Shown here piece by piece: positions 14,926 through 64,000 of a DNA stretch of 64,000 bases. This DNA comes from Macrostomum lignano (lineage: Eukaryota), in NCBI GenBank assembly GCA_002269645.1, contig NIVC01002410.1:48800-112799 (forward strand). Direction: 5' to 3'. The notes under the pieces are model-generated. The model was not told where the DNA came from. It ran no database searches and saw only the letters and a program-made list of their open reading frames with translations. A program made the position numbers and the translations under genes. Position 1 is the first letter of the stretch. Every line of letters begins with the position of its first letter.

Positions 14926-15084
14926 AGTTTAAGCAAAACAAAGACTAGTTTGAGATCGATTTAGCGCTTTAATAACAAAATAACAGACAGGTTTGGCGCC
15001 ATAGACTTAGACTTTGCTAATCGTATCCCATGCCATTTCCCGTTATTCATGCTCTAGGGTCGCTGCCGCGCACCAGGCAGAGCC

Positions 15085-37563
<22,479 letters not shown>

Positions 37564-42120: not shown

Positions 42121-42197
42121 GCCACCGCGAGCCTCTGATATCATAAACCAGAGAAAATTGAATCGAATATTTTCAGTAAAGCAACAATAAGAGTCCA

Positions 42198-43919
42198 ATG
42201 TCTCAGCAGCAGCAGCAGACGCAGCCTGCTCAAGCTCGCGGTCACGCCCCGGTAGAGCCGGAGCAGTGCCTCATACTGCGCCTGCCCCAGCCAGCTGCTG
42301 ACAAGCTCAGGGGGGACATCGAGTCGGGCGCCCAGCTGCAGGACCGGCTAAGCCTGGAGGCCCGGCAGGATCTGCGCAGCTTCACTCTAACCTACGACGG
42401 CGAGACCCTGCCCGGCCGGCTGGTTGACCTGCCCTGCATAGTTGAGGGACTGAAGACTGCCGACTCGCGTACCTTCTACAAGGTGGCCAACATCACCCAG
42501 ATGCTGATGTGCGGCGAGGATGCCGCCTCAGCTTTGCAGACGCTTCAACGATCCTCGGGTAGTCGCCGCCGCAGATCGGCTTCGGCTTCGGCGACGGTCA
42601 CGGCGACGGCCGAGGAGCGGATGCACCAGTGGGATCACGGACTGACGCCGCCATTGAGAAATGTTCGCCGCAGGCGGTTCCGTCGGGTGTTGCGCAATCG
42701 CAGTATGGACATGCCGGAGCTGGAGAAGGAGGTCAAACGGCTGCTGAAAAACGATATGGAAGCGGCAGATGTCAAGTGGGAGGTGAGAGAGTTATTAGAA
42801 CTGAATTTAATTAGAACTCGGCAGATATAACCGCTTATAATTAGAACTGGATTGAGATAGAACTCGGCAGATATAGCCGCTTATAATTAGAACTGAATTG
42901 AGATAGAACTCGGTAGATATAACCGCTTATAATTAGAACTGAATTGAGATAGAACTCGGCAGATATAACCGCTTATAATTAGAACTGAATTGAGATAGAA
43001 CTCGGCAGATATAACCGCTTAGAATTAGAACTGAATTGAGATAGAACTCGGTAGATATAACCGCTTATAATTAGAACTGAATTGAGATAGAACTCGGCAG
43101 ATATAACCGCTTATAATTAGAACTGAATTGAGATAGAACTCGGCAGATATAACCGCTTATAATTAGAACTGAATTGAGATAGAACTCGGCAGATATAACC
43201 GCTTATAATTAGAACTGAATTGAGATAGAACTGGGCAGATATAACCGCTTAGAATTAGAATTGAATCGAGATAGAACTCGGCAGATATAACCGCTTATAA
43301 TTAGAACTGAATTGAGATAGAACTCGGCAGATATAACCGCTTAGAATTAGAATTGAATCGAGATAGAACTCGGCAGATATAACCGCTTATAATTAGAATT
43401 GAATTGAGATAGAACTCGGCAGATATAACCGCTTATAATTAGAACTGAATTGAGATAGAACTCTGTAGATATAACCGCTTATAATTAGAACTGAATTGAG
43501 ATAGAACTCTGTAGATATAACCGCTTAGAATTAGAATTGAATTGAGATAGAACTTGGCAGATATAACCGCTATATATGTGATTATGCACATGCACACAAA
43601 CATTCCTGTGTCAAAGGTGCTCACTGAAGAGGAGGCCTCTAAACTGGACTCGGCGTCTTCACAACAGCAGCAGTCGCAGCCTTCGGAGCAGCCCGCCGGC
43701 TCATCGCAAACTGTGGACGATGGCAGCAACAATCTGATGATGGCCACTCAGCTGTTTGGCGACATCAGCGACTCGACATCCTCCGGCGATAACGAGGGCG
43801 ACGATAGCGACGATGAAGAAGGCGAAGGCGAAGCTGGTGACGGCGACGGCGAAGGAGGCGATGACGGTGCAGATGATGCAGCTGAAAAAGCCGACGACAT
43901 TGACATGGAAGAGGACTGA
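42198..43919 (+). CDS. TAF7: TFIID subunit 7 (TAFII55 N-terminal domain), 295 aa. Exons 42198-42782, 43617-43919
   Basis: EQCLILRLP, GRLVDLPCIVEGLKT-D--TFYKVANITQML, WDHGLTPPLRNVRRRRFRR, PELEKEVKRLL...VKWEV followed by an acidic tail. Phase-0 GT-AG intron. Confidence 0.93.
42810..43570. repeat. 46-bp tandem repeat AGAACTCGGCAGATATAACCGCTTATAATTAGAACTGAATTGAGAT
   Basis: Fills the TAF7 intron. Confidence 0.97.
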
Positions 43920-46900
43920 TCCCGATTGCATAGTCCCGCTGAGGAAGAATCCCGATTGCATAGTCCCACTGAGGAAGAATCTCGATTGCATAGTCCCGCT
44001 GAGGAAGAATCCCGATTGCATAGTCCCGCTGAGGAAGAATCCCGATTGCATAGTCCCGCTGAGGAAGAATCTCGATTGCATAGTCCCGCTGAGGAAGAAT
44101 CCCGATTGCATAGTCCCGCTGAGGAAGAATCCCGATTGCATAGTCCCGCTGAGGAAGAATCCCGATTGCATAGTCCCGCTGAGGAAGAATCTCGATTGCA
44201 TAGTCCCGCTGAGGAAGAATCCCGATTGCATAGTCCCGCTGAGGAAGAATCTCGATTGCGTAGTCCCGCTGAGGAAGAATCCCGATTGCATAGTCCCGCT
44301 GAGGAAGAATCCCGATTGCATAGTCCCGCTGAGGAAGAATCCCGATTGCATAGTCCCGCTGAGGAAGAATCCCGATTGCATAGTCCCGCTGAGGAAGAAT
44401 CTCGATTGCATAGTCCCGCTGAGGAAGAATCCCGATTGCATAGTCCCGCTGAGGAAGAATCCCGATTACATAGTCCCGCTGAGGAAGAATCCCCGATTGC
44501 ATAGTCTTACTGAGGAAGAATCCCGATTGCATAGTCCCGCTGAGGAAGAATCCCGATTGCATAGTCCCGCTGAGGAAGAATCCCGATTGCATAGTCCCGC
44601 TGAGGAAGAATCCCGATTGCATAGTCCCGCTGAGGAAGAATCCCGATTGCATAGTCCCGCTGAGGAAGAATCCCGATTACATAGTCCCGCTGAGGAAGAA
44701 TCCCGATTGCATAGTCCCGCTGAGGAAGATTCCCGATTGCATAGTCCCGCTGAGGAAGAATCCCGATTGCATAGTCTTACTGAGGAAGAATCCCGATCGC
44801 ATAGTCCCGCTGAGGAAGAATCCCGATTGCATAGTCCCGCTGAGGAAGAATCCCGATTGCATAGTCCCGCTGAGGAAGAATCCCGATTGCATAGTCCCGC
44901 TGAGGAAGAATCCCGATTGCATAGTCCCGCTGAGGAAGAATCCCGATTGCATAGTCCCGCTGAGGAAGAATCCCGATTGCATAGTCCTGAGGAAGAATCC
45001 CGATTGCATAGTCTTACTGAGGAAGAATCCCGATCGCATAGTCCCGCTGAGGAAGAATCCTGATTGCATAGTCCCGCTGAGGAAGAATCCCCCGATTGCA
45101 TAGTCCCACTGAGGAAGAATCCCGATTGCATAGTCCCGCTGAGGAAGAATCCCGATTGCATAGTCCCGCTGAGGAAGAATCTCGATTGCATAGTCCCGCT
45201 GAGGAAGAATCCAGATTGCATAGTCCCGCTGAGGAAGAATCCCCGATTGCATAGTCCCGCTGAGGAAGAATCCCCGATTGCATAGTCCCGCTGAGGAAGA
45301 ATCCCGATTGCATAGTCCCGCTGAGGAAGAATCCCGATTGCATAGTCCCGCTGAGGAAGAATCCCGATTGCATAGTCCCGCTGAGGAAGAATCCAGATTG
45401 CATAGTCCCGCTGAGGAAGAATCCCGATTGCATAGTCCCGCTGAGGAAGAATCCCGATTGCATAGTCCCGCTGAGGAAGAACCCGATTGCGTAGTCCCGC
45501 TGAGGAAGAACCCCGATTGCATAGTCTTACTGAGGAAGAATCCAGATTGCATAGTCTTACTGAGGAAGAATCCCGATTGCATAGTCTTACTGAGGAAGAA
45601 TCCCCCGATTGCATAGTCTTACTGAGGAAGAATCCAGATTGCATAGTCTTACTGAGGAAGAATCCCCCGATTGCATAGTCTTACTGAGGAAGAATCCCGA
45701 TTGCATAGTCTTACTGAGGAAGAATCCCGATTGCATAGTCTTACTGAGGAAGAATCCCCGATTGCATAGTCTTACTGAGGAAGAATCCCGATTGCATAGT
45801 CCCGCTGAGGAAGAATCCCGATTGCATAGTCCCGCTGAGGAAGAATCCCGATTGCATAGTCCCGCTGAGGAAGAATCCCGATTGCATAGTCCCGCTGAGG
45901 AAGAATCCCGATTGCATAGTCCCGCTGAGGAAGAATCCCGATTGCATAGTCCCGCTGAGGAAGAATCCCGATTGCATAGTCCCGCTGAGGAAGAATCCAG
46001 ATTGCATAGTCCCGCTGAGGAAGAATCCCGATTGCATAGTCCCGCTGAGGAAGAATCCCGATTGCATAGTCCCGCTGAGGAAGAATCCCGATTGCATAGT
46101 CCCGCTGAGGAAGAATCCCGATTGCATAGTCCCGCTGAGGAAGAATCCCGATTACATAGTCCCGCTGAGGAAGAATCCCGATTGCATAGTCCCGCTGAGG
46201 AAGAATCCCGATTGCATAGTCCCGCTGAGGAAGAATCCCGATTGCATAGTCCCGCTGAGGAAGAATCCCGATTGCATAGTCCCGCTGAGGAAGAATCCCG
46301 ATTGCATAGTCCCGCTGAGGAAGAATCCCGATTACATAGTCCCGCTGAGGAAGAATCCCGATTGCATAGTCCCGCTGAGGAAGATTCCCGATTGCATAGT
46401 CCCGCTGAGGAAGAATCCCGATTGCATAGTCTTACTGAGGAAGAATCCCGATCGCATAGTCCCGCTGAGGAAGAATCCCGATTGCATAGTCCCGCTGAGG
46501 AAGAATCCCGATTGCATAGTCCCGCTGAGGAAGAATCCCGATTGCATAGTCCCGCTGAGGAAGAATCCCGATTACATAGTCCCGCTGAGGAAGAATCCCG
46601 ATTGCATAGTCCCGCTGAGGAAGAATCCCGATTGCATAGTCTTACTGAGGAAGAATCCCGATTGCATAGTCTTACTGAGGAAGAATCCCGATCGCATAGT
46701 CCTGATTGCATAGTCCCGCTGAGGAAGAATCCCGATTGCATAGTCCTGAGGAAGAATCCCGATTGCATAGTCCCGCTGAGGAAGAATCCCGATTGCATAG
46801 TCCCGCTGAGGAAGAATCCGATTGCATAGTCCCGCTGAGGAAGAATCCAGATTGCATAGTCCCGCTGAGGAAGAATCCCCGATTGCATAGTCCCGCTGAG

Positions 46901-47805
46901 GAAGAATCCCCGATTGCATAGTCCCGCTGAGGAAGAATCCCGATTGCATAGTCCCGCTGAGGAAGAATCCCGATTGCATAGTCCCGCTGAGGAAGAATCC
47001 CGATTGCATAGTCCCGCTGAGGAAGAATCCAGATTGCATAGTCCCGCTGAGGAAGAATCCCGATTGCATAGTCCCGCTGAGGAAGAATCCCGATTGCATA
47101 GTCCCGCTGAGGAAGAACCCGATTGCATAGTCCCGCTGAGGAAGAACCCGATTGCATAGTCTTACTGAGGAAGAATCCAGATTGCATAGTCTTACTGAGG
47201 AAGAATCCCGATTGCATAGTCTTACTGAGGAAGAATCCCCCGATTGCATAGTCTTACTGAGGAAGAATCCAGATTGCATAGTCTTACTGAGGAAGAATCC
47301 CCCGATTGCATAGTCTTACTGAGGAAGAATCCCGATTGCATAGTCTTACTGAGGAAGAATCCCCCGATTGCATAGTCTTACTGAGGAAGAATCCCCCGAT
47401 TGCATAGTCTTACTGAGGAAGAATCCCGATTGCATAGTCCCGCTGAGGAAGAATCCCGATTGCATAGTCCCGCTGAGGAAGAATCCCGATTGCATAGTCC
47501 CGCTGAGGAAGAATCCCGATTGCATAGTCCCGCTGAGGAAGAATCCCGATTGCATAGTCCCGCTGAGGAAGAATCCCGATTGCATAGTCCCGCTGAGGAA
47601 GAATCCCGATTGCATAGTCCCGCTGAGGAAGAATCCAGATTGCATAGTCCCGCTGAGGAAGAATCCCGATTGCATAGTCCCGCTGAGGAAGAATCCCGAT
47701 TGCATAGTCCCGCTGAGGAAGAATCCCGATTGCATAGTCCCGCTGAGGAAGAACCCCATAGTCCCGCTGAGGAAGAATTGCATAGTCCCGCTGAGGAAGA
47801 ACCCC
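43912..47805. repeat. 30-bp minisatellite CCCGATTGCATAGTCCCGCTGAGGAAGAAT, about 3.9 kb
   Basis: Starts at the TAF7 stop codon and produces all HSPAEEESR / SGFFLSGTMQ ORFs. Confidence 0.97.
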
Positions 47806-48234
47806 AATTTCGCAGAGTACGTACAAAGCCTGTGGTAAACAGAGTCCCCAAATTAATTGTTCGCATTGCTACTAAATATCGTTACTTTTTCTGCAAGTTC
47901 TGTCTGTACCCGCCTGGCTTTTCTGATTGATGAAATTTCAACTTTTCCGCAGCAATTCATTAATTGGCGTATTTTTCTTGCTCTCCAGTTCTAGCTAATC
48001 TGCTTTTGGCCTGTTTTTTGGTGCATTTCTGTCTGGTTAAGTGCGTACAGTTTTATATTATAAGTGCGTTTGCACTGAGGCTGTATAATTATTCTGTAAA
48101 TAAAACTCTGCCCATAGTGCGGCTGCTTACTGTTGCTTACGAAACAGAATAGTAATTTTAAAACTTTTTTATCCAATGCACTAACCGAGTTCGGTCGGCT
48201 TCATGTGTGAAGCATTTTAGAAACTTGAATAGAG

Positions 48235-49560
48235 GCATTTTAGTAGCTTGAGGGGCATCTTAGTTTCTTTATATCACATATTTCGGTCCCAAAAGACATT
48301 GTAGCTCGTGGCTTGAGGGACATTTTTAGTGTCTTATATGAATGACATTTTAGGCTCCAAGAGACATTGTAGAAGCTGAGGAGACGTTTTTAGGTCCTGA
48401 GAGACATTGTAGTGGCTTGAGGGACATTTTTAGTGTCTTATATGACATTTTAGGCTCCAAGAGACATTGTACTCGTAAAAGCTGAAGAGACGTTTTTAGG
48501 TCCTGAGACGAGACATTGTAGTGGCTTGAGGGACATTTTAGCCACTGGAGAATATTTTCAGGTCATGAGAGACATTTTAGTGGCTGGAGAATATTTTCAG
48601 GTCATGGGAGACATTTTAGTGGCTGGAGAGACACTTTTAGGTCCTGAAGAGACATTGTAGTAGCTTGAGTGACATTTTTAGGTGCTGAGAGACATTTTTA
48701 GGTGCTGAGAGACATTGTAGTAGCTTGAGGAACATTTTTAGGTTCTGAGAGACATTGTAGTAGCTTGAGTGACATTTTTAGGTGCTGAGAGACATTTTTA
48801 GGTGCTGAGAGACATTGTAGTGTCTTGAGGGATATTTTAATGTCTTATATGACATTTTAGGCTCCAAGAGACATTGTAGAAGCTGAGGAGACGTTTTTAG
48901 GTCCTGAGAGACATTGTAGTGGCTTGAGGGACATTTTTAGTGTCTTATATGACATTTTAGGCTCCAAGAGACATTGTACTCGTAAAAGCTGAAGAGACGT
49001 TTTTAGGTCCTGAGACGAGACATTGTAGTGGCTTGAGGGACATTTTAGCCACTGGAGAATATTTTCAGGTCATGAGAGACATTTTAGTGGCTGCAGAATA
49101 TTTTCAGGTCATGGGAGACATTTTAGTGGCTGGAGAGACACTTTTAGGTCCTGAAGAGACATTGTAGTAGCTTGAGTGACATTTTTAGGTGCTGAGAGAC
49201 ATTTTTAGGTGCTGAGAGACATTGTAGTAGCTTGAGGAACATTTTTAGGTTCTGAGAGACATTGTAGTAGCTTGAGTGACATTTTTAGGTGCTGAGAGAC
49301 ATTTTTAGGTGCTGAGAGACATTGTAGTAGCTTGAGGAACATTTTTAGGTCCTGAGAGACATTGTAGTAGCTTGAGTGACATTTTTAGGTCCTGAGAGAC
49401 ATTGTAGTAGCTTGAGTGACATTTTTAGGTCCTGAGAGACATTGTAGTAGCTTGAGTGACATTTTTAGGTCCTGAGAGACATTGTAGTGGCTTTGAGGAC
49501 ATTTTAAAGCCTTACGAGGACAATTTAGTAAACTAGTGGGCATTTTTGGGGCTTAAGAGA
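48235..49560. repeat. Composite GAGACATTTT(T)AG / GAGACATTGTAG repeat with a ~507-bp higher-order duplication
   Basis: Unique variants (e.g. ACTCGTAAAAGCTG at 48471 and 48978) recur at offset 507. Confidence 0.9.
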
Positions 49561-49623
49561 CATTTTGGTCAGCTTTAGTAATATTTATTTAGTGTCATTC
49601 ATGCACCTTGCCGCCACCTACAG

Positions 49624-52600
49624 GAGGCCTGGGCTCAGCTATTCAACACCTCGGATGGCGGCCTGGCACTCGAGCTGCTCTCCGATCGCTGCCAAATCGG
49701 TCGGGCCGTCGACTGCGACTTGTCCTTGGCCGGCAACCAGTTCGTGTCCGGGCACCACTGCGCCGTGTTCAAGGATCCCGACGGCGGAGTCTGGCTGCAG
49801 GACACCAGCATGAACGGCACTCTGGTCAATGGCCGTCGGATTCTTGGCGACGTGGCCGAGCTGCGACAGGATGACGTCATCACTGTCTGTCCGCTGCCCG
49901 GCAACTCTACGGTGGCATTTCGCCTCAAACTGCTCGGCCACGAACAGCCGGATGAAGCTAGCGAGTCTGGCAGCGCGGAACCGCCTCAAACTATGGTCAT
50001 TCCCGACACGACTCTACCCATAACTGACGGCGACAGCGGCGAGGACCCGACGACCGATCAGCCGCCGACTAAGCGAACTCGAACAGATGAAGCTAAAGAT
50101 AAAGCTGAAGCTGAAGATGAAGATGAAGATGAAGCTAAAGATGAAGCTAATAAATCGGCGGTCACTACCAAAAAGGGTAAGTTAATATCTGAATAAATCC
50201 CAATAATAAATCCAAATAATGCTACTTACTTAGTAGTAGAGGTAGTACTTCATTATAAAAAACATTTTACCATCTTTGACCGAAAAATGCTAAGCCCAGT
50301 AAGCCTACAAAACAAGAAGTAATCTGGACACCTTGCTATTGCATCTACAGGACCTGATCAACCGGCAATAATGTTGGCAGCAGATCCCAGCACAGTCAGC
50401 AAAGTGCCAACAGTTTCAGCCGATGCTGCCGCAGCATCCGCATCCGCCTCTGCTTCATCCTCCGCTTCCGGCGATCCAATGGAAGCCAATCTGAACTGCA
50501 CAATTTGTTGCGAAATATTTCACGACTGCGTCACCCTGATACCCTGTCTGCACGGCTATTGTGCCGGCTGTTACAGCCAGTGGCGACGGACTAATCCGGT
50601 CTGTCCGCAGTGTCGCGTACGTCCGGAACGCGTGACCAAGAACGTGCTGGTGACTAATCTAGCCGAGGCTTACCTGGCTGCGCATCCGGAACGGCGGCGC
50701 CCAGCTGAGGAGTTGGAGAAGTGCGAATCCTGTTTGGCTTTGGTTGGCGGGCGGGGGGCTGCGGTCTGGGGGCGGATTTTGTGAGTTGATGGGTAGAGAG
50801 CGGATTCTGCGTGGGTAGATGGGTAGAGAGCGGATCCTGTGTGAGTAGATGGGTAGAGGGCGGATTCTGTGTGAGTAGATGGGTAGAGCGCGGATTCTGT
50901 GTGAGTAGATGGGTAGAGGGCGGATCCTGTGTGAGTAGATGGGTAGAGCGCGGATCCTGTGTGAGTAGATGGGTAGAGCGCGGATCCTGTGTGAGTAGAT
51001 GGGTAGAGGGCGGATTCTGTGTGAGTAGATGGATAGAGCGCGGATCCTGTGTGAGTGGATGGGTAGAGAGAGGATCCTGTGTGAGTAGATGGGTAGAGCG
51101 CGGATTCTGTGTGAGTAGATGGGTAGAGGGCGGATTCTGTGTGAGTAGATGGGTAGAGCGCGGATCCTGTGTGAGTAGATGGGTAGAGGGCGGATCCTGC
51201 GGGTAGATGGGTAGAGGGCGGATCCTGTGTGAGTAGATGGGTAGAGGGCGGATCCTGTGTGAGTGGATGGGTAGAGGGCGGATCCTGTGTGAGTAGATGG
51301 GTAGAGGGCAGATCCTGCGGGTAGATGGGTAGAGGGCGGATCCTGTGTGAGTAGATGGGTAGAGGGCGGATCCTGTGTGAGTAGATGGGTAGAGCGCGGA
51401 TCCTGTGTGAGTAGATGGGTAGAGGGCGGATCCTGTGTGAGTAAATGGGTAGAGGGCGGATCCTGTGTGAGTAGATGGGTAGAGCGCGGATCCTGTGTGA
51501 GTAGATGGGTAGAGGGCGGATCCTGTGTGAGTAAATGGGTAGAGCGCGGATCCTGTGTGAGTAAATGGGTAGAGGGCGGATCCTGTGTGAGTAGATGGGT
51601 AGAGGGCGGATCCTGTGTGAGTAGATGGGTAGAGCGCGGATCCTGTGTGAGTAGATGGGTAGAGGGCGGATCCTGTGTGAGTAGATGGGTAGAGGGCAGA
51701 TCCTGTGTGAGTAGATGGGTAGAGCGCGGATCCTGTGTGAGTAAATGGGTAGAGGGCGGATCCTGTGTGAGTAGATGGGTAGAGCGCGGATCCTGTGTGA
51801 GTGGATGGGTAGAGCGCGGATCCTGTGTGAGTAGATGGGTAGAGCGCGGATCCTGTGTGAGTAGATGGGTAGAGCGCGGATCCTGTGTGAGTGGATGGGT
51901 AGAGCGCGGATCCTGTGTGAGTAGATGGGTAGAGCGCGGATCCTGTGGGAGTAGATGGGTAGAGCACGGATCCTGTGTGAGTAGATGGGTAGAGCGCGGA
52001 TCCTGTGTGAGTAGATGGGTAGAGCGCGGATCCTGTGTGAGTAGATGGGTAGAGCGCGGATCCTGTGTGAGTGGATGGGTAGAGCGCGGATCCTGTGTGA
52101 GTAGATGGGTAGAGCGCGGATCCTGTGGGAGTAGATGGGTAGAGCACGGATCCTGTGTGAGTAGATGGGTAGAGCGCGGATCCTGTGTGAGTAAATGGGT
52201 AGAGGGCGGATCCTGTGTGAGTAGATGGGTAGAGGGCGGATCCTGTGTGAGTGGATGGGTAGAGAGAGGATCCTGTGTGAGTAGATGGGTAGAGCGCGGA
52301 TCCTGTGTGAGTAGATGGGTAGAGCGCGAATCCTGTGTGAGTAGATGGGTAGAGGGCGGATCCTGTGTGAGTAGATGGGTAGAGGGCGGATCCTGTGTGA
52401 GTAGATGGGTAGAGGGTGGATCCTGTGTGAGTAGATGGGTAGAGGGCGGATTCTGTGTGAGTAGATGGGTAGAGGGCGGATCCTGTGTGAGTAGATGGGT
52501 AGAGGGCGGATCCTGTGTGAGTAGATGGGTAGAGGGCGGATCCTGTGTGAGTAGATGGGTAGAGGGCGGATCCTGTGTGAGTAGATGGGTAGAGGGCGGA

Positions 52601-54706
52601 TCCTGTGTGAGTAGATGGGTAGAGGGCGGACCCTATTGTAGATACATCCAGTTTCAGAGCAGTCTGTTTCTACACAACAATAGATTTAAAACTCATTCAG
52701 GCTCGACAGTCTCAACGACATCGGCCGGCAGGAGGCCTTCCCGGTGGTCAGACAGTCTCCAGCTGATGAGGACGAATCCGACGAAGAAGATGAAGACAGC
52801 GATGACGACGGCAATGCCGGAGTCGCCTACTTTGGAATGAACCAGCTGTTCGGGTTCGCAGGGCCGTACCCGACCTATCAGCTGCATCGGTTGGCGACCC
52901 CACCGCATTTGCGGCACGTCTGCCGCCAGTGCCCGGGCTACCAGCCGCCCGACCCGCAGCAGCCGCTGGCGCCGTTGCGAGCTGCCGGCGCGGGCCCGCC
53001 GCCTGTGGACGGCTGTCCCCATCTGGACGATCTCCGATGGGAGCCGCTGCAAGTTGCTCACGTGTCAGTCTCTGCCAGTTTAATGACCTCTTAGAGAATC
53101 GCCCTAAATATCCTAGAAAATCGCCCTCAGCCTCCTAGAGAATCGCCCTCAGCCTCCTAGAGAATCGCCCTCAGCCTTCTAGAGAATTGCCCTCAGCCTC
53201 TTAGAGAATCGCCCTCAGCCTCCTAGAGAATCGCCCTCAGCCTCCTAGAGAATCATCGTCAACCTCTCAGATAATAACCCTCAGCATCCTAGAGAATCGC
53301 CCAAAGCCTCCTAGAGAATCGCCCTCAGCCTCCTAGAGAATCATCGTCAACCTCTCAGATAATAACCCTCAGCATCCTAGAGAATCGCCCTCAGCATCCT
53401 AGAGAATCGCCCTCAGCATCCTAGAGAATCGCCCTCAGCCTCCTAGAGAATCACACTCAGCCTCCTAGAGAATCGCCGTCAACCTTTTAGAGAATCGCCC
53501 TCAGCCTCTTAGAGAATCGCCTTGACCTCTTTAAAAGCACTTTAAAGGATGAAGAATTGCTCAAAGTACTTTCAAATCCGCCTCACACCCCCAGCTGCCC
53601 GGACAACCAGGCCCACCTGCTGTGCCAGTGCTGCTGGCAGGCCTTCCCAGACCGCCGGGCCGACCCGTCCTGCCCGGCCGAGAATCGCCGATTCCAGTGC
53701 GCCCTGTGCCAGCGCTTCTTCTGCCACGCTTACTGGGGCTGCCGCCGGCCCGGCTGCCTCGGCTGCCTGGCCGAATTCGAGGATTTCACATTCGGCAGGC
53801 GCGTGCTCGAGGACGTTGTCAATGGCAACCCGGTTGAGTCCAAGGTGATTTTCCGAATGGCCCTAAATCACCCTTCAGATTCGCCATAAATCACTTTTCA
53901 GAGCCGGGCCCAACCATCCCTGAGAATCACTCCAAACCATCCCTGAGAATCACTCCATCCATCGCTGAGAATCACCCCATCCATCCCTGAGAATCACTCC
54001 ATCCATCCTGAGAATCACTCCATCCATCCTGAGAATCACTCCATCCATCCTGAGAATCACTCCATCCATCCTGAGAATCACCCCATCCATCCCTGAGAAT
54101 CACTTCATCCATCCTGAGAATCACTCCATCCATCCTGAGAATCACCCCATCCATCCTGAGAATCACTCCATCCATCCTGAGAATCACTCCATCCATCCTG
54201 AGAATCACTCCATCCATCCTGAGAATCACCCCATCCATCCTGAGAATCACTCCATCCATCCTGAGAATCACCCCATCCATCCTGAAAATCACTCCATCCA
54301 TCCTGAGAATCACCCCATCCATCCTGAGAATTGCTCCTTCAAGGATCCATCCCTAAAAATGACATCATCCCCAATTCCATTGTCGCAGATCCTCGCCGAC
54401 TACCTCATCGCCAACAATATGGGCGTTCGCGACCTGCTCCGAGAGTGCTGCGCCCGCCTGGCCGCAGGCGAGTACCGCTGCAGCCGGCCAGTCCGGCCGG
54501 ACACCCCTGTGTGCTACGCCTGCGGCCAGGCCTGCCTCCGAGAACTGGCCCTGGCCTATCGCTCGGGCCTGCCCGCCGCCTCCCTGCCTGCCGAGGCGGC
54601 CAGCCGGCCCAACTGTCACTGGGGCAGCGAGTGCCGCACTCAGTTTAATAAGCCGGAGCATGCGAAACGGTTTAATCACGCTTGCCGGCGGACCAAGTTT
54701 GACTAG
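49624..54706 (+). CDS. CHFR: E3 ubiquitin ligase CHFR (FHA, RING, Cys-rich, PBZ), about 630 aa. Exons 49624-50176, 50351-50720, 52701-~53061, ~53548-53844, 54389-54706. No in-frame start codon found in the first visible exon
   Basis: FHA IGRAVDCDLSLAGNQFVSGHHC..LQDTSMNGT; RING CTICCEIFHDCVTLIPCLHGYCAGCYSQW..CPQCR; AHLLCQCCWQAFPDRR; CALCQRFFCHAYWGC; PBZ RPNCHWGSECRTQ..HAKRFNHAC. The exon 3/4 junction is ambiguous by a few codons. Confidence 0.93.
50780..52630. repeat. 30-bp minisatellite GAGTAGATGGGTAGAG(C/G)GCGGATCCTGTGT
   Basis: CHFR intron 2; source of both 497-aa artefact ORFs. Confidence 0.97.
53090..53525. repeat. 22-bp repeat CCTAGAGAATCGCCCTCAGCCT
   Basis: CHFR intron 3. Confidence 0.93.
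53910..54335. repeat. 21-bp repeat CCTGAGAATCACTCCATCCAT
   Basis: CHFR intron 4. Confidence 0.95.
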
Positions 54707-54744: not shown

Positions 54745-54808
54745 GTGAGCTAGTTAGTTAGTTAGTTAGTTAATCAATTAGTTAGTTAGTTAGTTAGTTA
54801 TTTAGTTT

Positions 54809-54841
<33 letters not shown>

Positions 54842-54890
54842 CTAGCTAGTTAGTCAGTTAGTTAGTTAGTTAGTTAGTTAGTTAGCTAGC

Positions 54891-54926
<36 letters not shown>

Positions 54927-54935
54927 CAGTTAGTC

Positions 54936-54977
<42 letters not shown>

Positions 54978-55051
54978 CTAGTTAGCTAGTTAGTCAGTTA
55001 GTCAGTTAGTTAGTTAGTTAGTTAGTTAATTAGTTAGTTAGTTAGTTAGTC

Positions 55052-56755: not shown

Positions 56756-57706
56756 ATGCCCATGCCAAGCGCATCAGTGCTGCAGTTGCAGCATCGCTGC
56801 TGCCGTCTTGTTATTCAACGATACCTTCGATTGGTTGAGCAGCACCGACTGAGACTGGGACAGCAAGGCTACAGGCGCTGCAGCAGCGGAGGCGGCGGCA
56901 GCGACCTTGGCCGGATTGCGCGTCGCTTGCGAGATCAACCAAGACAGCAAAAGCAGCAGCAGCAGCAGCAGCAGCAGCAAGACCCGAATAGCCAGAGCGG
57001 AGCATGGAGCGAGTACTCAACCCAGACGGCCGAGTTCGCCTCAATCGGCTCCACCCAGACCAGCAAAGCGGTGCTGCTATTCGAGGCTCCGCCTCACCAG
57101 CTCTACAAGCGCAACTGCCTATCCGGTTTAATCGCTCTGCTTAGCGCCTATCTGATGTTCGACCACCTGCGGCATAGTCGGCTGATTGCCGGACACGAGG
57201 AGGCCGCCCTGCAGCGTCGCCTGATGAGCGACGATGATTTATTGCAGTCTGGCGATGGCGATTCTGTTGATGACGCCGCTGACACCAGCTGGCTAACCAG
57301 TCTGGCCTCCAGCCTGCCTAGCAGCAGCCTTGGCAGCCCCATCAACCTGCTCATCGCCGCCCTGCTCAGTCTCACCGCCCTGCTATCTGGCATGTACGCA
57401 TTTGCTCATCCGCTGCGTCTGGCCCGGCGTCTGGTGCTGGAGCCCGGCGGCCATCTGCTAGTGACCAGCCTGACTGGTGCGCGCCGAATTCCAATTAACC
57501 AACTGCGCGCCGCGGCGCCGGCCAACCTGCGCTGGATAGATATGGCGCCACTGTACACGGATCATCTGCTCATAGCGGCGCCGCCAGCTGAGCCGAATCA
57601 AAAGCGGCCCAGGCTGCTGGCCGTTGATAAGGACTCGCGTTTTGTTAAAGAGCCGACTCTGATGGCCGCCCTGGTTAAACAGGTCCGCATGCAAGCGGTC
57701 CGGTGA
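56756..57706 (+). CDS. TMEM223: TMEM223-like mitochondrial membrane protein (TMEM70/186/223 type), single exon, 316 aa
   Basis: Arg-rich N-terminus resembling a presequence, then VLLFE, two hydrophobic helices, RLARRLVLEPGG, IPINQL and LAVDKDSRF in the order I recall for TMEM223 (VLLFE..RSVRSVVLRAGG..VPLKQV..LLDKTGHF). Comparison is from memory only. Confidence 0.62.
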   Translation: MPMPSASVLQLQHRCCRLVIQRYLRLVEQHRLRLGQQGYRRCSSGGGGSDLGRIARRLRDQPRQQKQQQQQQQQQDPNSQSGAWSEYSTQTAEFASIGSTQTSKAVLLFEAPPHQLYKRNCLSGLIALLSAYLMFDHLRHSRLIAGHEEAALQRRLMSDDDLLQSGDGDSVDDAADTSWLTSLASSLPSSSLGSPINLLIAALLSLTALLSGMYAFAHPLRLARRLVLEPGGHLLVTSLTGARRIPINQLRAAAPANLRWIDMAPLYTDHLLIAAPPAEPNQKRPRLLAVDKDSRFVKEPTLMAALVKQVRMQAVR

Positions 57707-59188: not shown

Positions 59189-60331
59189 ATGTCTGATCAA
59201 TTTTCGAAAACCCCACAACCGCCGGCACAGGAAGACACGCTCCGTGTGAAAATTCTGGTGCTTGGCGACTCCGGCGTTGGCAAGTCCTCGCTTGTACACC
59301 TGCTGACCAATCACAGCGAGCTGACCAATCCAGCCTGGACTGTGGGCTGCTCATTGCAGGTCGGCCTGCACGAGTACAGGTCGGAGCTGACCGGCCAGGC
59401 TGAGCGGTTGTTCTTCCTGGAGTTCTGGGACATCGGCGGCTATCCGATGCACAAGAACAGCCGCGGTGTGTTCTACCACGGTGTACACGGCATCCTGCTG
59501 GTGCACGACCTCACTAACAGGAAGACTGAGCTCAATCTCAGTCGCTGGCTGCACGAGAGCTGCCTTGGCGCTGACACTCCGCCAGTGCTGGTGATTGGCG
59601 CCAAGAGCGACCTGTGCAAAGCCGATGCGCTGGCCAAGCGGCCAAACGGTGGCGAAGCTGCCCCTCGGATTGGCTGTCCGGAGATCCTGCTCAGCTGCGT
59701 GGACACCAGATCGCTGAGCGCTGGCACCACCAATGCCGTCAAGCTGGACCGCTTCTATGATCAGGTCATCGAGTACAGGCTGCGGCCCAGGGCCTCCACT
59801 CCGCCTAGGGTTGGACAGGTGCGCAACTGGGTGTGCGATTCTGGAATGTCCGGCTATGGGATTATGGGATGTCCGGATATGGGACTCTGGGATGTCCGGT
59901 TATGGGATTCTCGGATGTCCGGCTATGGGACTCTGGGATGTCCAGAAAAGGGATTCTCGGATGTCCGGCTATGGGACTCTGGGATGTCCAGCAATGGGAT
60001 TCTGGGATGTCCGGCTATGGGATTCTGGGATGTCCGGATATGAGATGATGGGATGTCCTGTTATGGGATTCTGGGATGTGCAGATATGGCATTCTGGGGT
60101 GTCCGGCTTTGGGATGTCCGGCTATGGGATTCCGTCTATGGGATTCTGGGATTTTCCGGATATGGTCATGCCTGATTATTGGATTCTGATGTCTGCTGAT
60201 GTCACTGAAATGGCTATCGAGCAGTTCTGTCAACCCAGCTTGTGTCACAAATTCGTTCACTTTCGCACTTTCACTTGCAGGCAATTTCTCGTCCCAACCG
60301 TCAACAGTCGAAATTGCTTCACGGCGAATAA
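59189..60331 (+). CDS. RABL3: Rab-like protein 3, 226 aa. Exons 59189-59818, 60281-60331
   Basis: RVKILVLGDSGVGKSSLVHLL, NPAWTVGCS, EFWDIGG, GILLVHDLTNRK, AGTTNAVKLDRFYDQVIE. Donor CAG|GTGCGC at 59818 and acceptor TTTCACTTGCAG at 60280 give a final exon AISRPNRQQSKLLHGE*. Confidence 0.93.
59840..60150. repeat. 23-bp repeat GGGATGTCCGGCTATGGGATTCT
   Basis: RABL3 intron. Confidence 0.9.
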
Positions 60332-62272: not shown

Positions 62273-64000
62273 TCAGTAGGCCGAGTTGGCCGGACTGCTA
62301 TTGACGGCGTCAAACGCATCAAACAGCTGCTGCTGCTGCTGCTGCTGCTGCTGCAGCCCCGCGCGGCCCGCCGGCTTTCCACCCTGAAGTCGAACGTCGC
62401 CCATGTCGCCGGGCGCGAACTGCTGCTGCTGCCTGCCAGCGCTGCTGGAGTACATGTGCTTCACCAGCTCGCGCTCGAAGCTGTTCAAGTCTTCGGAGCG
62501 CTCCTCGTCTTCGTGGTCGGCGGTTTCCGTCTTTTCGTTGCCGGCGTAGGGAGATCGAGACGACAGCAGCTGCTGGCGGTGCTGCTGAAACTGCTGATGC
62601 TGCTGCAGTTGCTGCTGTTGAAGCATCTGCTGCATCAGCTGAGGCGGCATCTCCTGGCCCGGCATGCCGGACTCGTCAAAGTCGGTCATGATGTCGGAGC
62701 TGCCGGTAGGAGGCTGGGCGGCCGCCTGCTTCATCCGCGGCATGCCGCTGCTGCTGGCCTGGATGTAGCTGTTGAGCGAGGGCGGCTTGCTGAACCGGCT
62801 GCCGTTCTGCCGCACCCGCAGGAGGGCGCAGTCGTCGCCAACGCTGCGCAGCTCGGAGGCGGGCACGCGCCCAGCTCCTGTCAGATTGATGGTGCTGTCC
62901 TGCTCTTTCTCGTTGATGATGCTGATGTGAGTCTTGATGGCCAGCAGAGAGTCAGTTGGTAGGGCGACATTCTCCGGCAGGCAGCTGAAGATCTTCTGCA
63001 GATGCTCCACAGGCAGTCGCAGAAACGTTTTTCGCCACTTGGTGGCTGTGAGGGCTCGGCGAATGATGTCGGCCAGGGAGTTCATCGGGCCGTTTTTAAC
63101 CTTGCAGTGCATGCGGTAGTACAGGCCCATCAGCAGTGCGATGGCGCAGTCCTGGTCCATGATCATGGGGTCCAGGCTCTGGATGCGGGCAACAAACCCG
63201 GCCTTGGTGTCGGGCGTCGGCTGCAGCTCAAGGAAGCAGCGGTTTTTGAACAGCGTCTCCAGCGCGCTGATCAAGTTGTGCGACTTGCGACACTCCGGGT
63301 CCTCGTAGTACGCCACGCGGGCGATGCGGCGGAACAGGCTGATCTTCTGGCCGAACCCGTCATCGTGCCAAATGGCCGAATGGTGATGGGCTCTCGAGCA
63401 GGCTGCTGATATTGATGTTGAGCCGCGTCTTCATAGTCTCGGTGCGTAGTGGAGAGTGTCGCGATATTTGAATACCTTTTGGCTGGCCTTGCTCTCATAG
63501 TGCAGCTCGAATGGCCGGCTGATGTCCAACGTTCAGCGCCTGTCCGTGCTTCATGAACGGCGGCGCCACGCTGCTCAGGGAGCTGATGGCCTCGTAAAAC
63601 TCCCGCCTGATGGCGACGCACACGGGCAGGATCTCGACAATGTCGCCGCCGGCAACGCCTCGCGCTGAATACGTCTGTGGCGAAGCTCTTCTGGTGCCCA
63701 TGGTTGACTCCGCTGCGCAGGATGATCTCCACCGACTTCTCCTCCTTGAGGTAGATGGCCAGACTCAGCGGGTTGAGGCTACAGCACGGCGTTGCGGTGA
63801 AACATGGACTGAGAGTCGCGCGAGTCGTTCCCGATGAGGTCTGGCTGGTCGGCGATCTGGAAGATCTGCTGGAAACAGCTCGGGCCTCTCCCTCACCATG
63901 GTGGTGAGACGGTGGTGCGACCTGCCACGGATCATGTTGATCATCCATTTCGTGTACGGGTGATGGCTGCGTAGGAACGGTGGTATGTTCAGGTGCGAGT
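62273..64000 (-). CDS. Uncharacterised protein with an ankyrin-like segment and Gln-rich C-terminus. Runs off the window, and the 5' part is interrupted by about 6 frameshifts (errors or pseudogene)
   Basis: Clean GC3-rich frame 63376->62273. Upstream coding-like segments alternate frames, including LNPLSLAIYLKEEKSVEIILRSGVN (ankyrin-like) and GVAGGDIVEILPVCVAIRREFYEAISSL. Confidence 0.6.

What the first reader, a model, noticed from the sequence alone, without database searches (positions are those of the whole stretch)
49579..49720. CHFR lacks an in-frame ATG and would be completed exactly by a spliced-leader AUG
Seen: the FHA-coding frame starts at 49624 (GAG GCC TGG GCT CAG CTA, EAWAQL) right after ...CCACCTACAG, and an in-frame TAA lies at 49579. 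The nearby ATG at 49601 is out of frame. The first in-frame ATG (DTSMNG, about 49810) is deep inside the FHA domain. Upstream lie 1.3 kb of repeat and the TAF7 3' region, and I found no convincing ATG-bearing exon there. Established: platyhelminth SL RNAs end in AUG, which in Schistosoma can act as the initiator Met. Inference: phase-0 trans-splicing at 49623 gives M-E-A-W-A-Q-L, which places the FHA Trp near the N-terminus as in other CHFRs. The gene's start codon would then be supplied in trans.
Basis: partly seen in the sequence, partly recalled or inferred. Interest (0 to 1): 0.75.

Follow-up and report, generated by a model that had tools for sequence, protein, structure and literature searches.

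The report
CHFR start codon from spliced leader
In the flatworm Macrostomum lignano the CHFR gene has no start codon of its own, and the AUG at the end of the trans-spliced leader almost certainly supplies it, a mechanism known in flatworms since 2006.

Summary
The window is Macrostomum lignano assembly Mlig_3_7, NIVC01002410.1:48800-112799. This species has a 35-nt spliced leader (SL) that ends in ATG.

The FHA-coding exon starts at 49624, directly after CTACAG. An in-frame TAA lies 45 nt upstream, and the first in-frame ATG falls at codon 63, inside the FHA domain.

- **Annotation.** GenBank lists this gene (PAA58109.1) as "partial". Its CDS begins exactly at 49624 (EAWAQLF...), and a five-exon model from the window reproduces that protein exactly. 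Three models from a separate set (UniProt) start at the same residue.
- **Gene copies.** The acceptor is identical in all three genomic copies. In the diverged copy, sequence upstream of it carries a 4-nt indel and loses the nearby ATG, while the FHA-coding part shows only synonymous changes.
- **Relatives.** CHFR proteins of other invertebrates begin M plus 2-8 residues before the same (E)AW[AG]QLV motif (e.g. MEEAWGQLV). An SL-made MEAWAQLF fits that pattern.
- **Second case.** A RABL3-like gene in the same window shows the same arrangement.

Direct SL-junction reads and protein evidence could not be obtained here. It is a new example of a known mechanism (Cheng et al. 2006), so interest is modest.

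The parts
49579..49581 (+). In-frame TAA that closes the FHA reading frame 45 nt upstream of the exon
49601..49603 (+). Out-of-frame ATG in the outron. It is not conserved (AAG in paralogous copy L003)
49604..49623 (+). Pyrimidine-rich tract and 3' splice acceptor CTACAG (49618-23). It matches the M. lignano trans-splice acceptor motif [T/C]TNCAG. These 20 nt are identical in all three genomic copies. CAGGAG (49621-26) is a possible NAGNAG tandem acceptor, in frame either way
49624..50176 (+). CHFR exon 1 (FHA domain). It is the first base of the GenBank partial CDS PAA58109.1. The proposed mRNA reads SL...AUG|GAG GCC UGG = M-E-A-W
50351..50720 (+). CHFR exon 2 (RING finger)
52701..53063 (+). 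CHFR exon 3 (acidic linker and start of the Cys-rich region)
53595..53844 (+). CHFR exon 4 (Cys-rich domain, PF17979)
54389..54706 (+). CHFR exon 5 (PBZ-type zinc finger CHWGSECRTQFNKPEHAKRFNH; stop TAG at 54704-06)
48308..49506 (+). 20/40/100-nt tandem repeat that fills most of the presumed outron or intercistronic spacer
48099..48104 (+). The only AATAAA between the TAF7 stop and the CHFR acceptor. It is the presumed TAF7 poly(A) signal and leaves about 300 nt of non-repeat spacer before CHFR
   Evidence: inference
42195..43919 (+). Upstream same-strand gene TAF7 (GenBank PAA58108.1, partial, with its own ATG at 42198). It is the possible upstream cistron
59231..60331 (+). RABL3-like gene. 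GenBank partial CDS PAA58111.1 starts EDTLRVKIL directly after CACAG, a second candidate for an SL-supplied AUG in the same cluster

Best explanation
The CHFR pre-mRNA of Macrostomum lignano is SL trans-spliced at the acceptor CTACAG|G (49623|49624). The 35-nt spliced leader ends in AUG. Joined in phase 0 to GAG GCC UGG, that AUG is the first AUG of the mRNA and the initiator codon, giving MEAWAQLFNTSDGG... with an intact FHA domain. The genome therefore encodes a CHFR ORF with no start codon of its own, which is why GenBank lists the protein as 'partial'. The gene may be a downstream cistron of a same-strand cluster (TAF7 > CHFR > unknown gene > RABL3-like).

Shown here: the organism, the exon structure, the absence of a genomic start, the conservation of the acceptor, and the annotated CDS start at the acceptor.

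Inferred: that the boundary is an SL junction, and that the SL AUG is the codon used.
For: - **Organism and locus.** The window is identical to NIVC01002410.1 of GCA_002269645.1.
- **SL.** The M. lignano SL ends in ATG, and 30-39% of its genes are trans-spliced (PMC8629364 and PMC5730564).
- **Gene model.** Five window exons translate exactly to PAA58109.1 ('partial', 617 aa), whose first codon is 49624.
- **How the annotation was made.** It trimmed the SL from reads and cut transcripts at trans-splice peaks. An unspliced 5'-partial ORF would instead have run up to the TAA at 49579.
- **Separate model set.** UniProt models A0A1I8HFM0, A0A1I8GC75 and A0A1I8F9R7 also start EAWAQLF. No model of any copy extends upstream colinearly.
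- **Gene copies.** The acceptor and 20 nt before it are identical in all 3 copies. Against the diverged copy L003, the upstream 130 nt carry 8 mismatches, a 4-nt indel and loss of ATG 49601. Exon 1 has 5 synonymous and 2 non-synonymous changes, none non-synonymous in the FHA domain, plus a 42-nt in-frame deletion.
- **No upstream exon.** No ATG...GT[AG]AG phase-0 exon lies upstream.
- **Orthologues.** They start M plus 2-8 residues before (E)AW[AG]QLV, e.g. MEEAWGQLV and MATEAWAQLV. Human Q14 aligns to the first exon codon.
- **Second case.** The RABL3-like gene is annotated the same way.
- **Precedent.** The flatworm SL AUG is a proven initiator in S. mansoni (Cheng et al. 2006, as cited in PMC9851317 and PMC12582326).
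Against: - No SL-junction read, cDNA or peptide could be retrieved. A scan of metagenome contigs for the junction found nothing, and the paper supplements do not list the gene.
- The annotated CDS starts in the two other copies are ragged (+6 and +12 nt). Some 5'-partial CDSs in this annotation do not abut an AG, e.g. the minus-strand gene at 63364 and TAF7 in L002. 'Partial' alone therefore does not prove a trans-splice site.
- The acceptor motif is common in the window.
- Phase agreement alone has a 1/3 prior.
Confidence: 0.8

Rival explanations
1. The acceptor at 49623 is used in cis. An unannotated upstream 5' exon, in the repeat-rich spacer or shared with TAF7, carries the real ATG, and the annotated transcripts are 5'-truncated.
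For: - One UniProt model (A0A1I8FKN3) joins TAF7 sequence to EAWAQLF at this same acceptor.
- Flatworm trans- and cis-splicing often share acceptors (PMC12582326).
- Ragged 5' ends occur in this annotation.
Against: - The fusion model is frameshifted: it uses the wrong frame of the TAF7 exon. A splice from that donor in the true TAF7 frame would be out of phase.
- No ATG...GT[AG]AG phase-0 candidate lies between 43920 and 49600, and only 13 ATGs are present.
- Seven models of this gene family start at or just after the acceptor, and none has an upstream exon.
- Orthologues need only about 1-8 more residues.
Confidence: 0.1
2. Translation starts at a downstream genomic AUG (codon 63 at 49810, or AIM at 50372 in exon 2). 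This would give a CHFR with no functional FHA domain, with exon 1 largely acting as 5' UTR.
For: In-frame ATGs exist at 49810 and 50372.
Against: - The FHA ORF is open for 184 codons and matches Pfam FHA and human CHFR FHA.
- Between copies it shows only synonymous change in the FHA domain.
- An SL AUG in frame and first on the mRNA would be met first by scanning ribosomes.
Confidence: 0.05
3. A near-cognate (non-AUG) codon in the 45 nt between the TAA and the exon initiates on an unspliced transcript, or the locus is a decaying copy or an assembly artefact.
For: - An in-frame ATT lies at 49594-96.
- M. lignano is a hidden polyploid with redundant copies, and copy L002 has a frameshift in its PBZ motif.
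Against: - That 45-nt stretch varies between copies, with 3 substitutions, while the acceptor is invariant.
- No annotated transcript includes it.
- The window copy and L003 keep a full ORF identical in all domains.
Confidence: 0.03

Closest known systems
SL-donated initiator AUG in flatworms (Cheng, Cohen, Ndegwa & Davis 2006, J Biol Chem 281:733; 'slORFs', PMC9851317)
   Same: An SL ending in AUG is trans-spliced in phase to an ORF that lacks its own start, and the AUG serves as the initiator Met. [quoted passage not shown]
   Different: The species is different (the free-living macrostomorph M. lignano) and so is the gene (CHFR). Use of the AUG is inferred here from genome and annotation, not shown experimentally.
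Macrostomum SL trans-splicing and operons (Wudarski 2017 PMC5730564; Ustyantsev & Berezikov 2021 PMC8629364; Wiberg 2023 PMC10468722)
   Same: The 35-nt SL is the same. The acceptor fits [T/C]TNCAG. The gene is evolutionarily conserved, the class reported to be enriched among trans-spliced genes. The same-strand neighbours have a repeat-inflated spacer, and about 300 nt remain once repeats are removed, below the 1-kb operon threshold.
   Different: In the text read here those papers do not analyse which genes depend on the SL AUG. They only note that the final ATG is a likely start codon. Operon membership of TAF7-CHFR was not tested here.
CHFR (checkpoint with FHA and RING finger domains) E3 ubiquitin ligase
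   Same: It has FHA, RING, a Cys-rich domain (PF17979) and a C-terminal PBZ-like zinc finger. It is 34-46% identical to human CHFR across four aligned blocks. The N-terminal (E)AW[AG]QLV motif is shared with other invertebrate CHFRs.
   Different: It has no genomic start codon, a long acidic linker, and repeat-filled introns.

Membership tests
Gene with SL-supplied initiator AUG (flatworm slORF) | The organism has an SL RNA whose exon ends in AUG | tested here: met
   The window was identified as M. lignano Mlig_3_7. The SL CGGTCTCTTACTGCGAAGACTCAATTTATTGCATG is taken from PMC8629364. The SL gene itself is not in the window.
Gene with SL-supplied initiator AUG (flatworm slORF) | A 3' splice acceptor lies directly upstream of the ORF with no cis donor or exon partner | tested here: met
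   A pyrimidine tract and CTACAG lie at 49604-23 and are invariant in 3 copies. No credible upstream ATG exon exists. None is annotated.
Gene with SL-supplied initiator AUG (flatworm slORF) | The SL AUG is in frame with the ORF, and there is no in-frame genomic AUG between the upstream stop and the conserved domain | tested here: met
   TAA at 49579. Phase-0 exon start at 49624. First in-frame ATG at codon 63, inside the FHA domain.
Gene with SL-supplied initiator AUG (flatworm slORF) | cDNA or RNA-seq reads carry the SL joined at this acceptor | not testable with these tools
   Support is indirect only. The SL-trimmed, trans-splice-cut annotation starts its CDS at 49624. A junction scan of metagenome contigs was empty.
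Gene with SL-supplied initiator AUG (flatworm slORF) | Translation initiates at the SL AUG | not testable with these tools
   Precedent exists only in S. mansoni. The N-termini of orthologues are consistent with it.
CHFR E3 ligase family | N-terminal FHA domain | tested here: met
   PF00498, E=3.4e-15. The best PDB match is human CHFR FHA, 1LGP, E=1.2e-9.
CHFR E3 ligase family | RING finger, Cys-rich domain and C-terminal PBZ-type zinc finger | tested here: met
Precomputed Pfam hits for PAA58109.1 are PF00097, PF13923 and PF17979.
M. lignano operon (polycistronic unit resolved by SL trans-splicing) | Same-strand neighbours, a downstream gene that is trans-spliced, and a repeat-adjusted intergenic distance under 1 kb | tested here: inconclusive
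   TAF7, CHFR, an unknown gene and the RABL3-like gene are all on the + strand. About 300 nt of non-repeat spacer follow the only AATAAA, at 48099. No transcript data are available to show a common precursor.

The most novel reading that the evidence does not exclude
Loss of the start codon may be common in M. lignano, not a peculiarity of CHFR. Two of the four consecutive same-strand genes from TAF7 to the RABL3-like gene (CHFR and the RABL3-like gene) are annotated with CDSs that begin, in phase 0, at the first base after a CAG acceptor. If a large share of the more than 20,000 trans-spliced genes have lost their own AUG, many GenBank proteins flagged 'partial' are in fact complete. Translation of thousands of conserved genes would then depend on trans-splicing. 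Start-codon loss would act as a ratchet that locks SL trans-splicing in place.
Probability: 0.45. Interest if true: 0.45.

Novelty: new member of a known kind. Interest (0 to 1): 0.27.

Why it matters
**Annotation.** PAA58109.1 and its paralogues, and probably many other M. lignano proteins flagged "partial", would be complete once the SL Met is added. Gene finders that demand a genomic ATG mis-model such loci. The frameshifted and fused UniProt models of this same gene show what goes wrong.

**Biology.** It would extend SL-AUG initiation, shown in a parasitic trematode, to an early-branching free-living flatworm. Full-length CHFR, a mitotic-checkpoint E3 ligase, would then depend strictly on trans-splicing.

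**Testability.** Transgenesis works in M. lignano, so the dependence can be tested directly.

It does not reveal a new mechanism.

Tried and rejected
- **First protein search.** The search with exon 1 alone found nothing, although the identical GenBank protein is in the collection. The word index is lossy, so that negative was discarded. The full-length model found the protein.
- **TOP3B search.** The TOP3B exon search returned no Macrostomum hit, and for a while I doubted that the window was M. lignano. The identity of L001 with the window settled it.
- **RNA families and SL gene.** An Rfam scan of the window found no family. A search for the SL sequence in the window found no SL gene.
- **Named data for the gene.** Supplements of four M. 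lignano papers, and a full-text search for Mlig022451, gave nothing on this gene. Wasik et al. 2015 is not held.
- **Junction in metagenomes.** An exact scan for the SL-exon junction in metagenome contigs gave 0, as expected.
- **Exact look-ups.** M+PAA58109 and M+RABL3 are not in the collection.
- **Representative search.** It found no other Macrostomum CHFR that could have carried an SL-translated N-terminus, but it did supply the orthologue N-termini.
- **Acceptor motif.** I rejected the YTNCAG match as significant evidence, because it occurs 221 times in the window.
- **ATG 49601.** I rejected it as a start. It is out of frame, has no downstream GT before the acceptor, and is AAG in copy L003.

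Full report
**The observation.**
- The frame reads *YLFSVIHAPCRHLQ|EAWAQLFNTSDGG..., with TAA at 49579-81.
- AG lies at 49622-23 and the first exon base is 49624.
- ATG 49601 lies 23 nt upstream, so it is out of frame, and no GT lies between it and the acceptor.
- The first in-frame ATG is 49810, codon 63.
- Pfam FHA matches exon residues 24-88 (E=3.4e-15).
- The best solved structure is the FHA domain of human CHFR (1LGP, E=1.2e-9).
- Region 48308-49506 is a 20/40/100-nt tandem repeat.

**Organism and gene.** The first two protein searches did not reveal the source. A five-exon CHFR model then hit [quoted passage not shown] (PAA58109.1, 617 aa). Fetching its contig showed that the window is NIVC01002410.1:48800-112799 of assembly GCA_002269645.1 (Mlig_3_7). 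Locus L001 is base-for-base identical to window 39624-64000. Exons 49624-50176, 50351-50720, 52701-53063, 53595-53844 and 54389-54706 translate exactly to PAA58109.1. The deposited CDS therefore starts at 49624 with EAWAQLF and has no Met, which is why it is flagged partial.

**Why that boundary matters.** M. lignano has one 35-nt spliced leader, CGGTCTCTTACTGCGAAGACTCAATTTATTGCATG. It is added to 30-39% of genes at acceptors with the motif [T/C]TNCAG (PMC8629364; PMC5730564). The acceptor here is CTACAG.

The Mlig_3_7 annotation trimmed the SL from reads, mapped the remainder and cut transcripts at trans-splice peaks. TransDecoder then called the ORFs. For a transcript whose genome-colinear part starts at 49624, that procedure yields exactly a 5'-partial CDS beginning at the first base. 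A transcript reaching further upstream would have given an ORF extended to the TAA at 49579.

Three UniProt models from a separate model set (A0A1I8HFM0, A0A1I8GC75, A0A1I8F9R7) also begin EAWAQLF. The two other GenBank copies begin 6 and 12 nt further in (WAQLF, QLFNTS). These are ragged ends, and they never lie upstream of the acceptor.

**Comparison of the three genomic copies.** The copies are L001, which is the window, L002 (NIVC01002993.1) and L003 (NIVC01000807.1).
- The last 20 nt before the exon, including the acceptor, are identical in all three.
- Against the diverged copy L003, the 130 nt upstream carry 8 substitutions and a 4-nt indel, and ATG 49601 becomes AAG.
- Exon 1 carries 5 synonymous and 2 non-synonymous changes. 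Neither non-synonymous change is in the FHA domain. There is also a 42-nt in-frame deletion in the acidic linker.
- Coding constraint therefore starts at the acceptor, and the nearby ATG is not conserved.

**Search for an upstream coding exon.** Between the TAF7 stop (43919) and 49600 there are only 13 ATGs. None opens an ORF that ends in a phase-0 GT[AG]AG donor. The few phase-0 GT sites are weak. Five are copies within the tandem repeat and one lies in unique sequence at 47969. One UniProt model (A0A1I8FKN3) fuses TAF7 sequence to EAWAQLF at the same acceptor. It reads the TAF7 exon in the wrong frame and is clearly a product of a frameshifted earlier assembly. I keep cis use of this acceptor as the main rival, at about 10%.

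**How much N-terminus is missing.** An exhaustive search of representative proteins with exon 1 returned many CHFR orthologues that align from their residues 4-9. Their N-termini include:
- MATEAWAQLVSTTD (Capitella teleta);
- MEEAWGQLVSLTD;
- MEGEAWGQLVSLTD;
- MSVNDEAWAQLV;
- MSAKEWAQLV.

The family starts M plus 2-8 residues before the conserved (E)AW[AG]QLV. The SL-completed MEAWAQLFNTSD fits this pattern, and there is no sign of a missing larger exon.

**Context.** TAF7 (42195-43919), CHFR, an unknown gene (56762-57706) and a RABL3-like gene (59231-60331) all lie on the + strand. The only AATAAA between TAF7 and CHFR is at 48099. Without the repeats, about 300 nt separate it from the CHFR acceptor. 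That is within the repeat-adjusted 1-kb criterion used to define M. lignano operons. Operon membership is an inference.

**A second case in the window.** The RABL3-like GenBank CDS (PAA58111.1, partial) was reconstructed exactly. It starts EDTLRVKILVLGD at 59231, directly after CACAG and in phase 0. None of six models extends upstream, although the genomic frame stays open to an ATG at 59189. The best solved structure is RABL3. An SL AUG would give MEDTLRVKILVLGD, the same length as human MASLDRVKVLVLGD (human sequence from memory).

By contrast, the unknown gene and TOP3B have their own ATGs. Some partial CDSs do not abut an AG. The AG-abutting starts are therefore not a convention of the annotation.

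**Comparison with what is known.** All reported flatworm SLs end in AUG. Cheng et al. (2006) showed that this AUG serves as initiator Met in Schistosoma mansoni. [quoted passage not shown] For Macrostomum, Wiberg et al. note that the SL's final ATG is a likely translation start codon (PMC10468722). I found no paper that treats CHFR or lists SL-AUG-dependent genes in M. lignano.

**Verdict.** The remaining doubt is that no SL-junction read or N-terminal peptide could be reached with these tools. The finding is a new, well-supported example of a known mechanism. Its practical value is for annotation, and its scientific interest is modest.

Noticed in passing
window 59189-59260 (RABL3-like gene, CDS 59231-60331): GenBank partial CDS PAA58111.1 begins EDTLRVKIL at the first base after CACAG. 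Six models from two annotations never extend upstream, although the frame is open to an ATG at 59189. This is a second likely SL-AUG-initiated gene (MEDTLRVKILVLGD).
   Followed up: partly
window 42170-42200 (TAF7 5' end): [quoted passage not shown] An SL AUG spliced there would be stopped after one codon. The GenBank CDS (PAA58108.1, partial) starts one codon before the ATG (PMSQQ).
   Followed up: partly
window 49621-49626: CAGGAG forms a NAGNAG-type tandem acceptor. Splicing 3 nt further in would still be in frame (MAWAQLF instead of MEAWAQLF).
   Followed up: no
L002 (NIVC01002993.1), equivalent of window ~54621-54624: This copy has a 1-nt deletion in a GGGG run inside the PBZ zinc-finger codons, which gives PAA53966.1 a frameshifted C-terminus. 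It is either a homopolymer assembly error or a decaying duplicate.
   Followed up: partly
window 43920-47810; 48308-49506; 50790-52640; 54750-55000: Long tandem repeats flank or fill the genes. A 30-nt repeat that is open in all three frames starts right at the TAF7 stop (about 3.9 kb). A 20/40/100-nt repeat lies upstream of CHFR. A 30-nt repeat fills CHFR intron 2. (TTAG)n follows the CHFR stop.
   Followed up: partly
UniProt A0A1I8FKN3, A0A1I8F6L8, A0A1I8IZ48, A0A1I8F932 (P0123-P0127): Models of the same gene family from a separate model set (UniProt) are frameshifted, start at out-of-frame ATGs, or fuse TAF7 to CHFR. This shows how gene finders fail on a gene that has no start codon.
   Followed up: partly
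window 15040-15090 (TOP3B 5' end): TOP3B has its own ATG at 15085 ([12 protein letters not shown]). A TAG|G site 27 nt upstream would be in frame and free of stops if it were ever used as an SL acceptor. This was not examined against any annotation.
   Followed up: no
(search tool behaviour): The word-indexed protein search missed identical or near-identical M. lignano proteins for two queries. Negative results from it should not be read as absence.
   Followed up: yes
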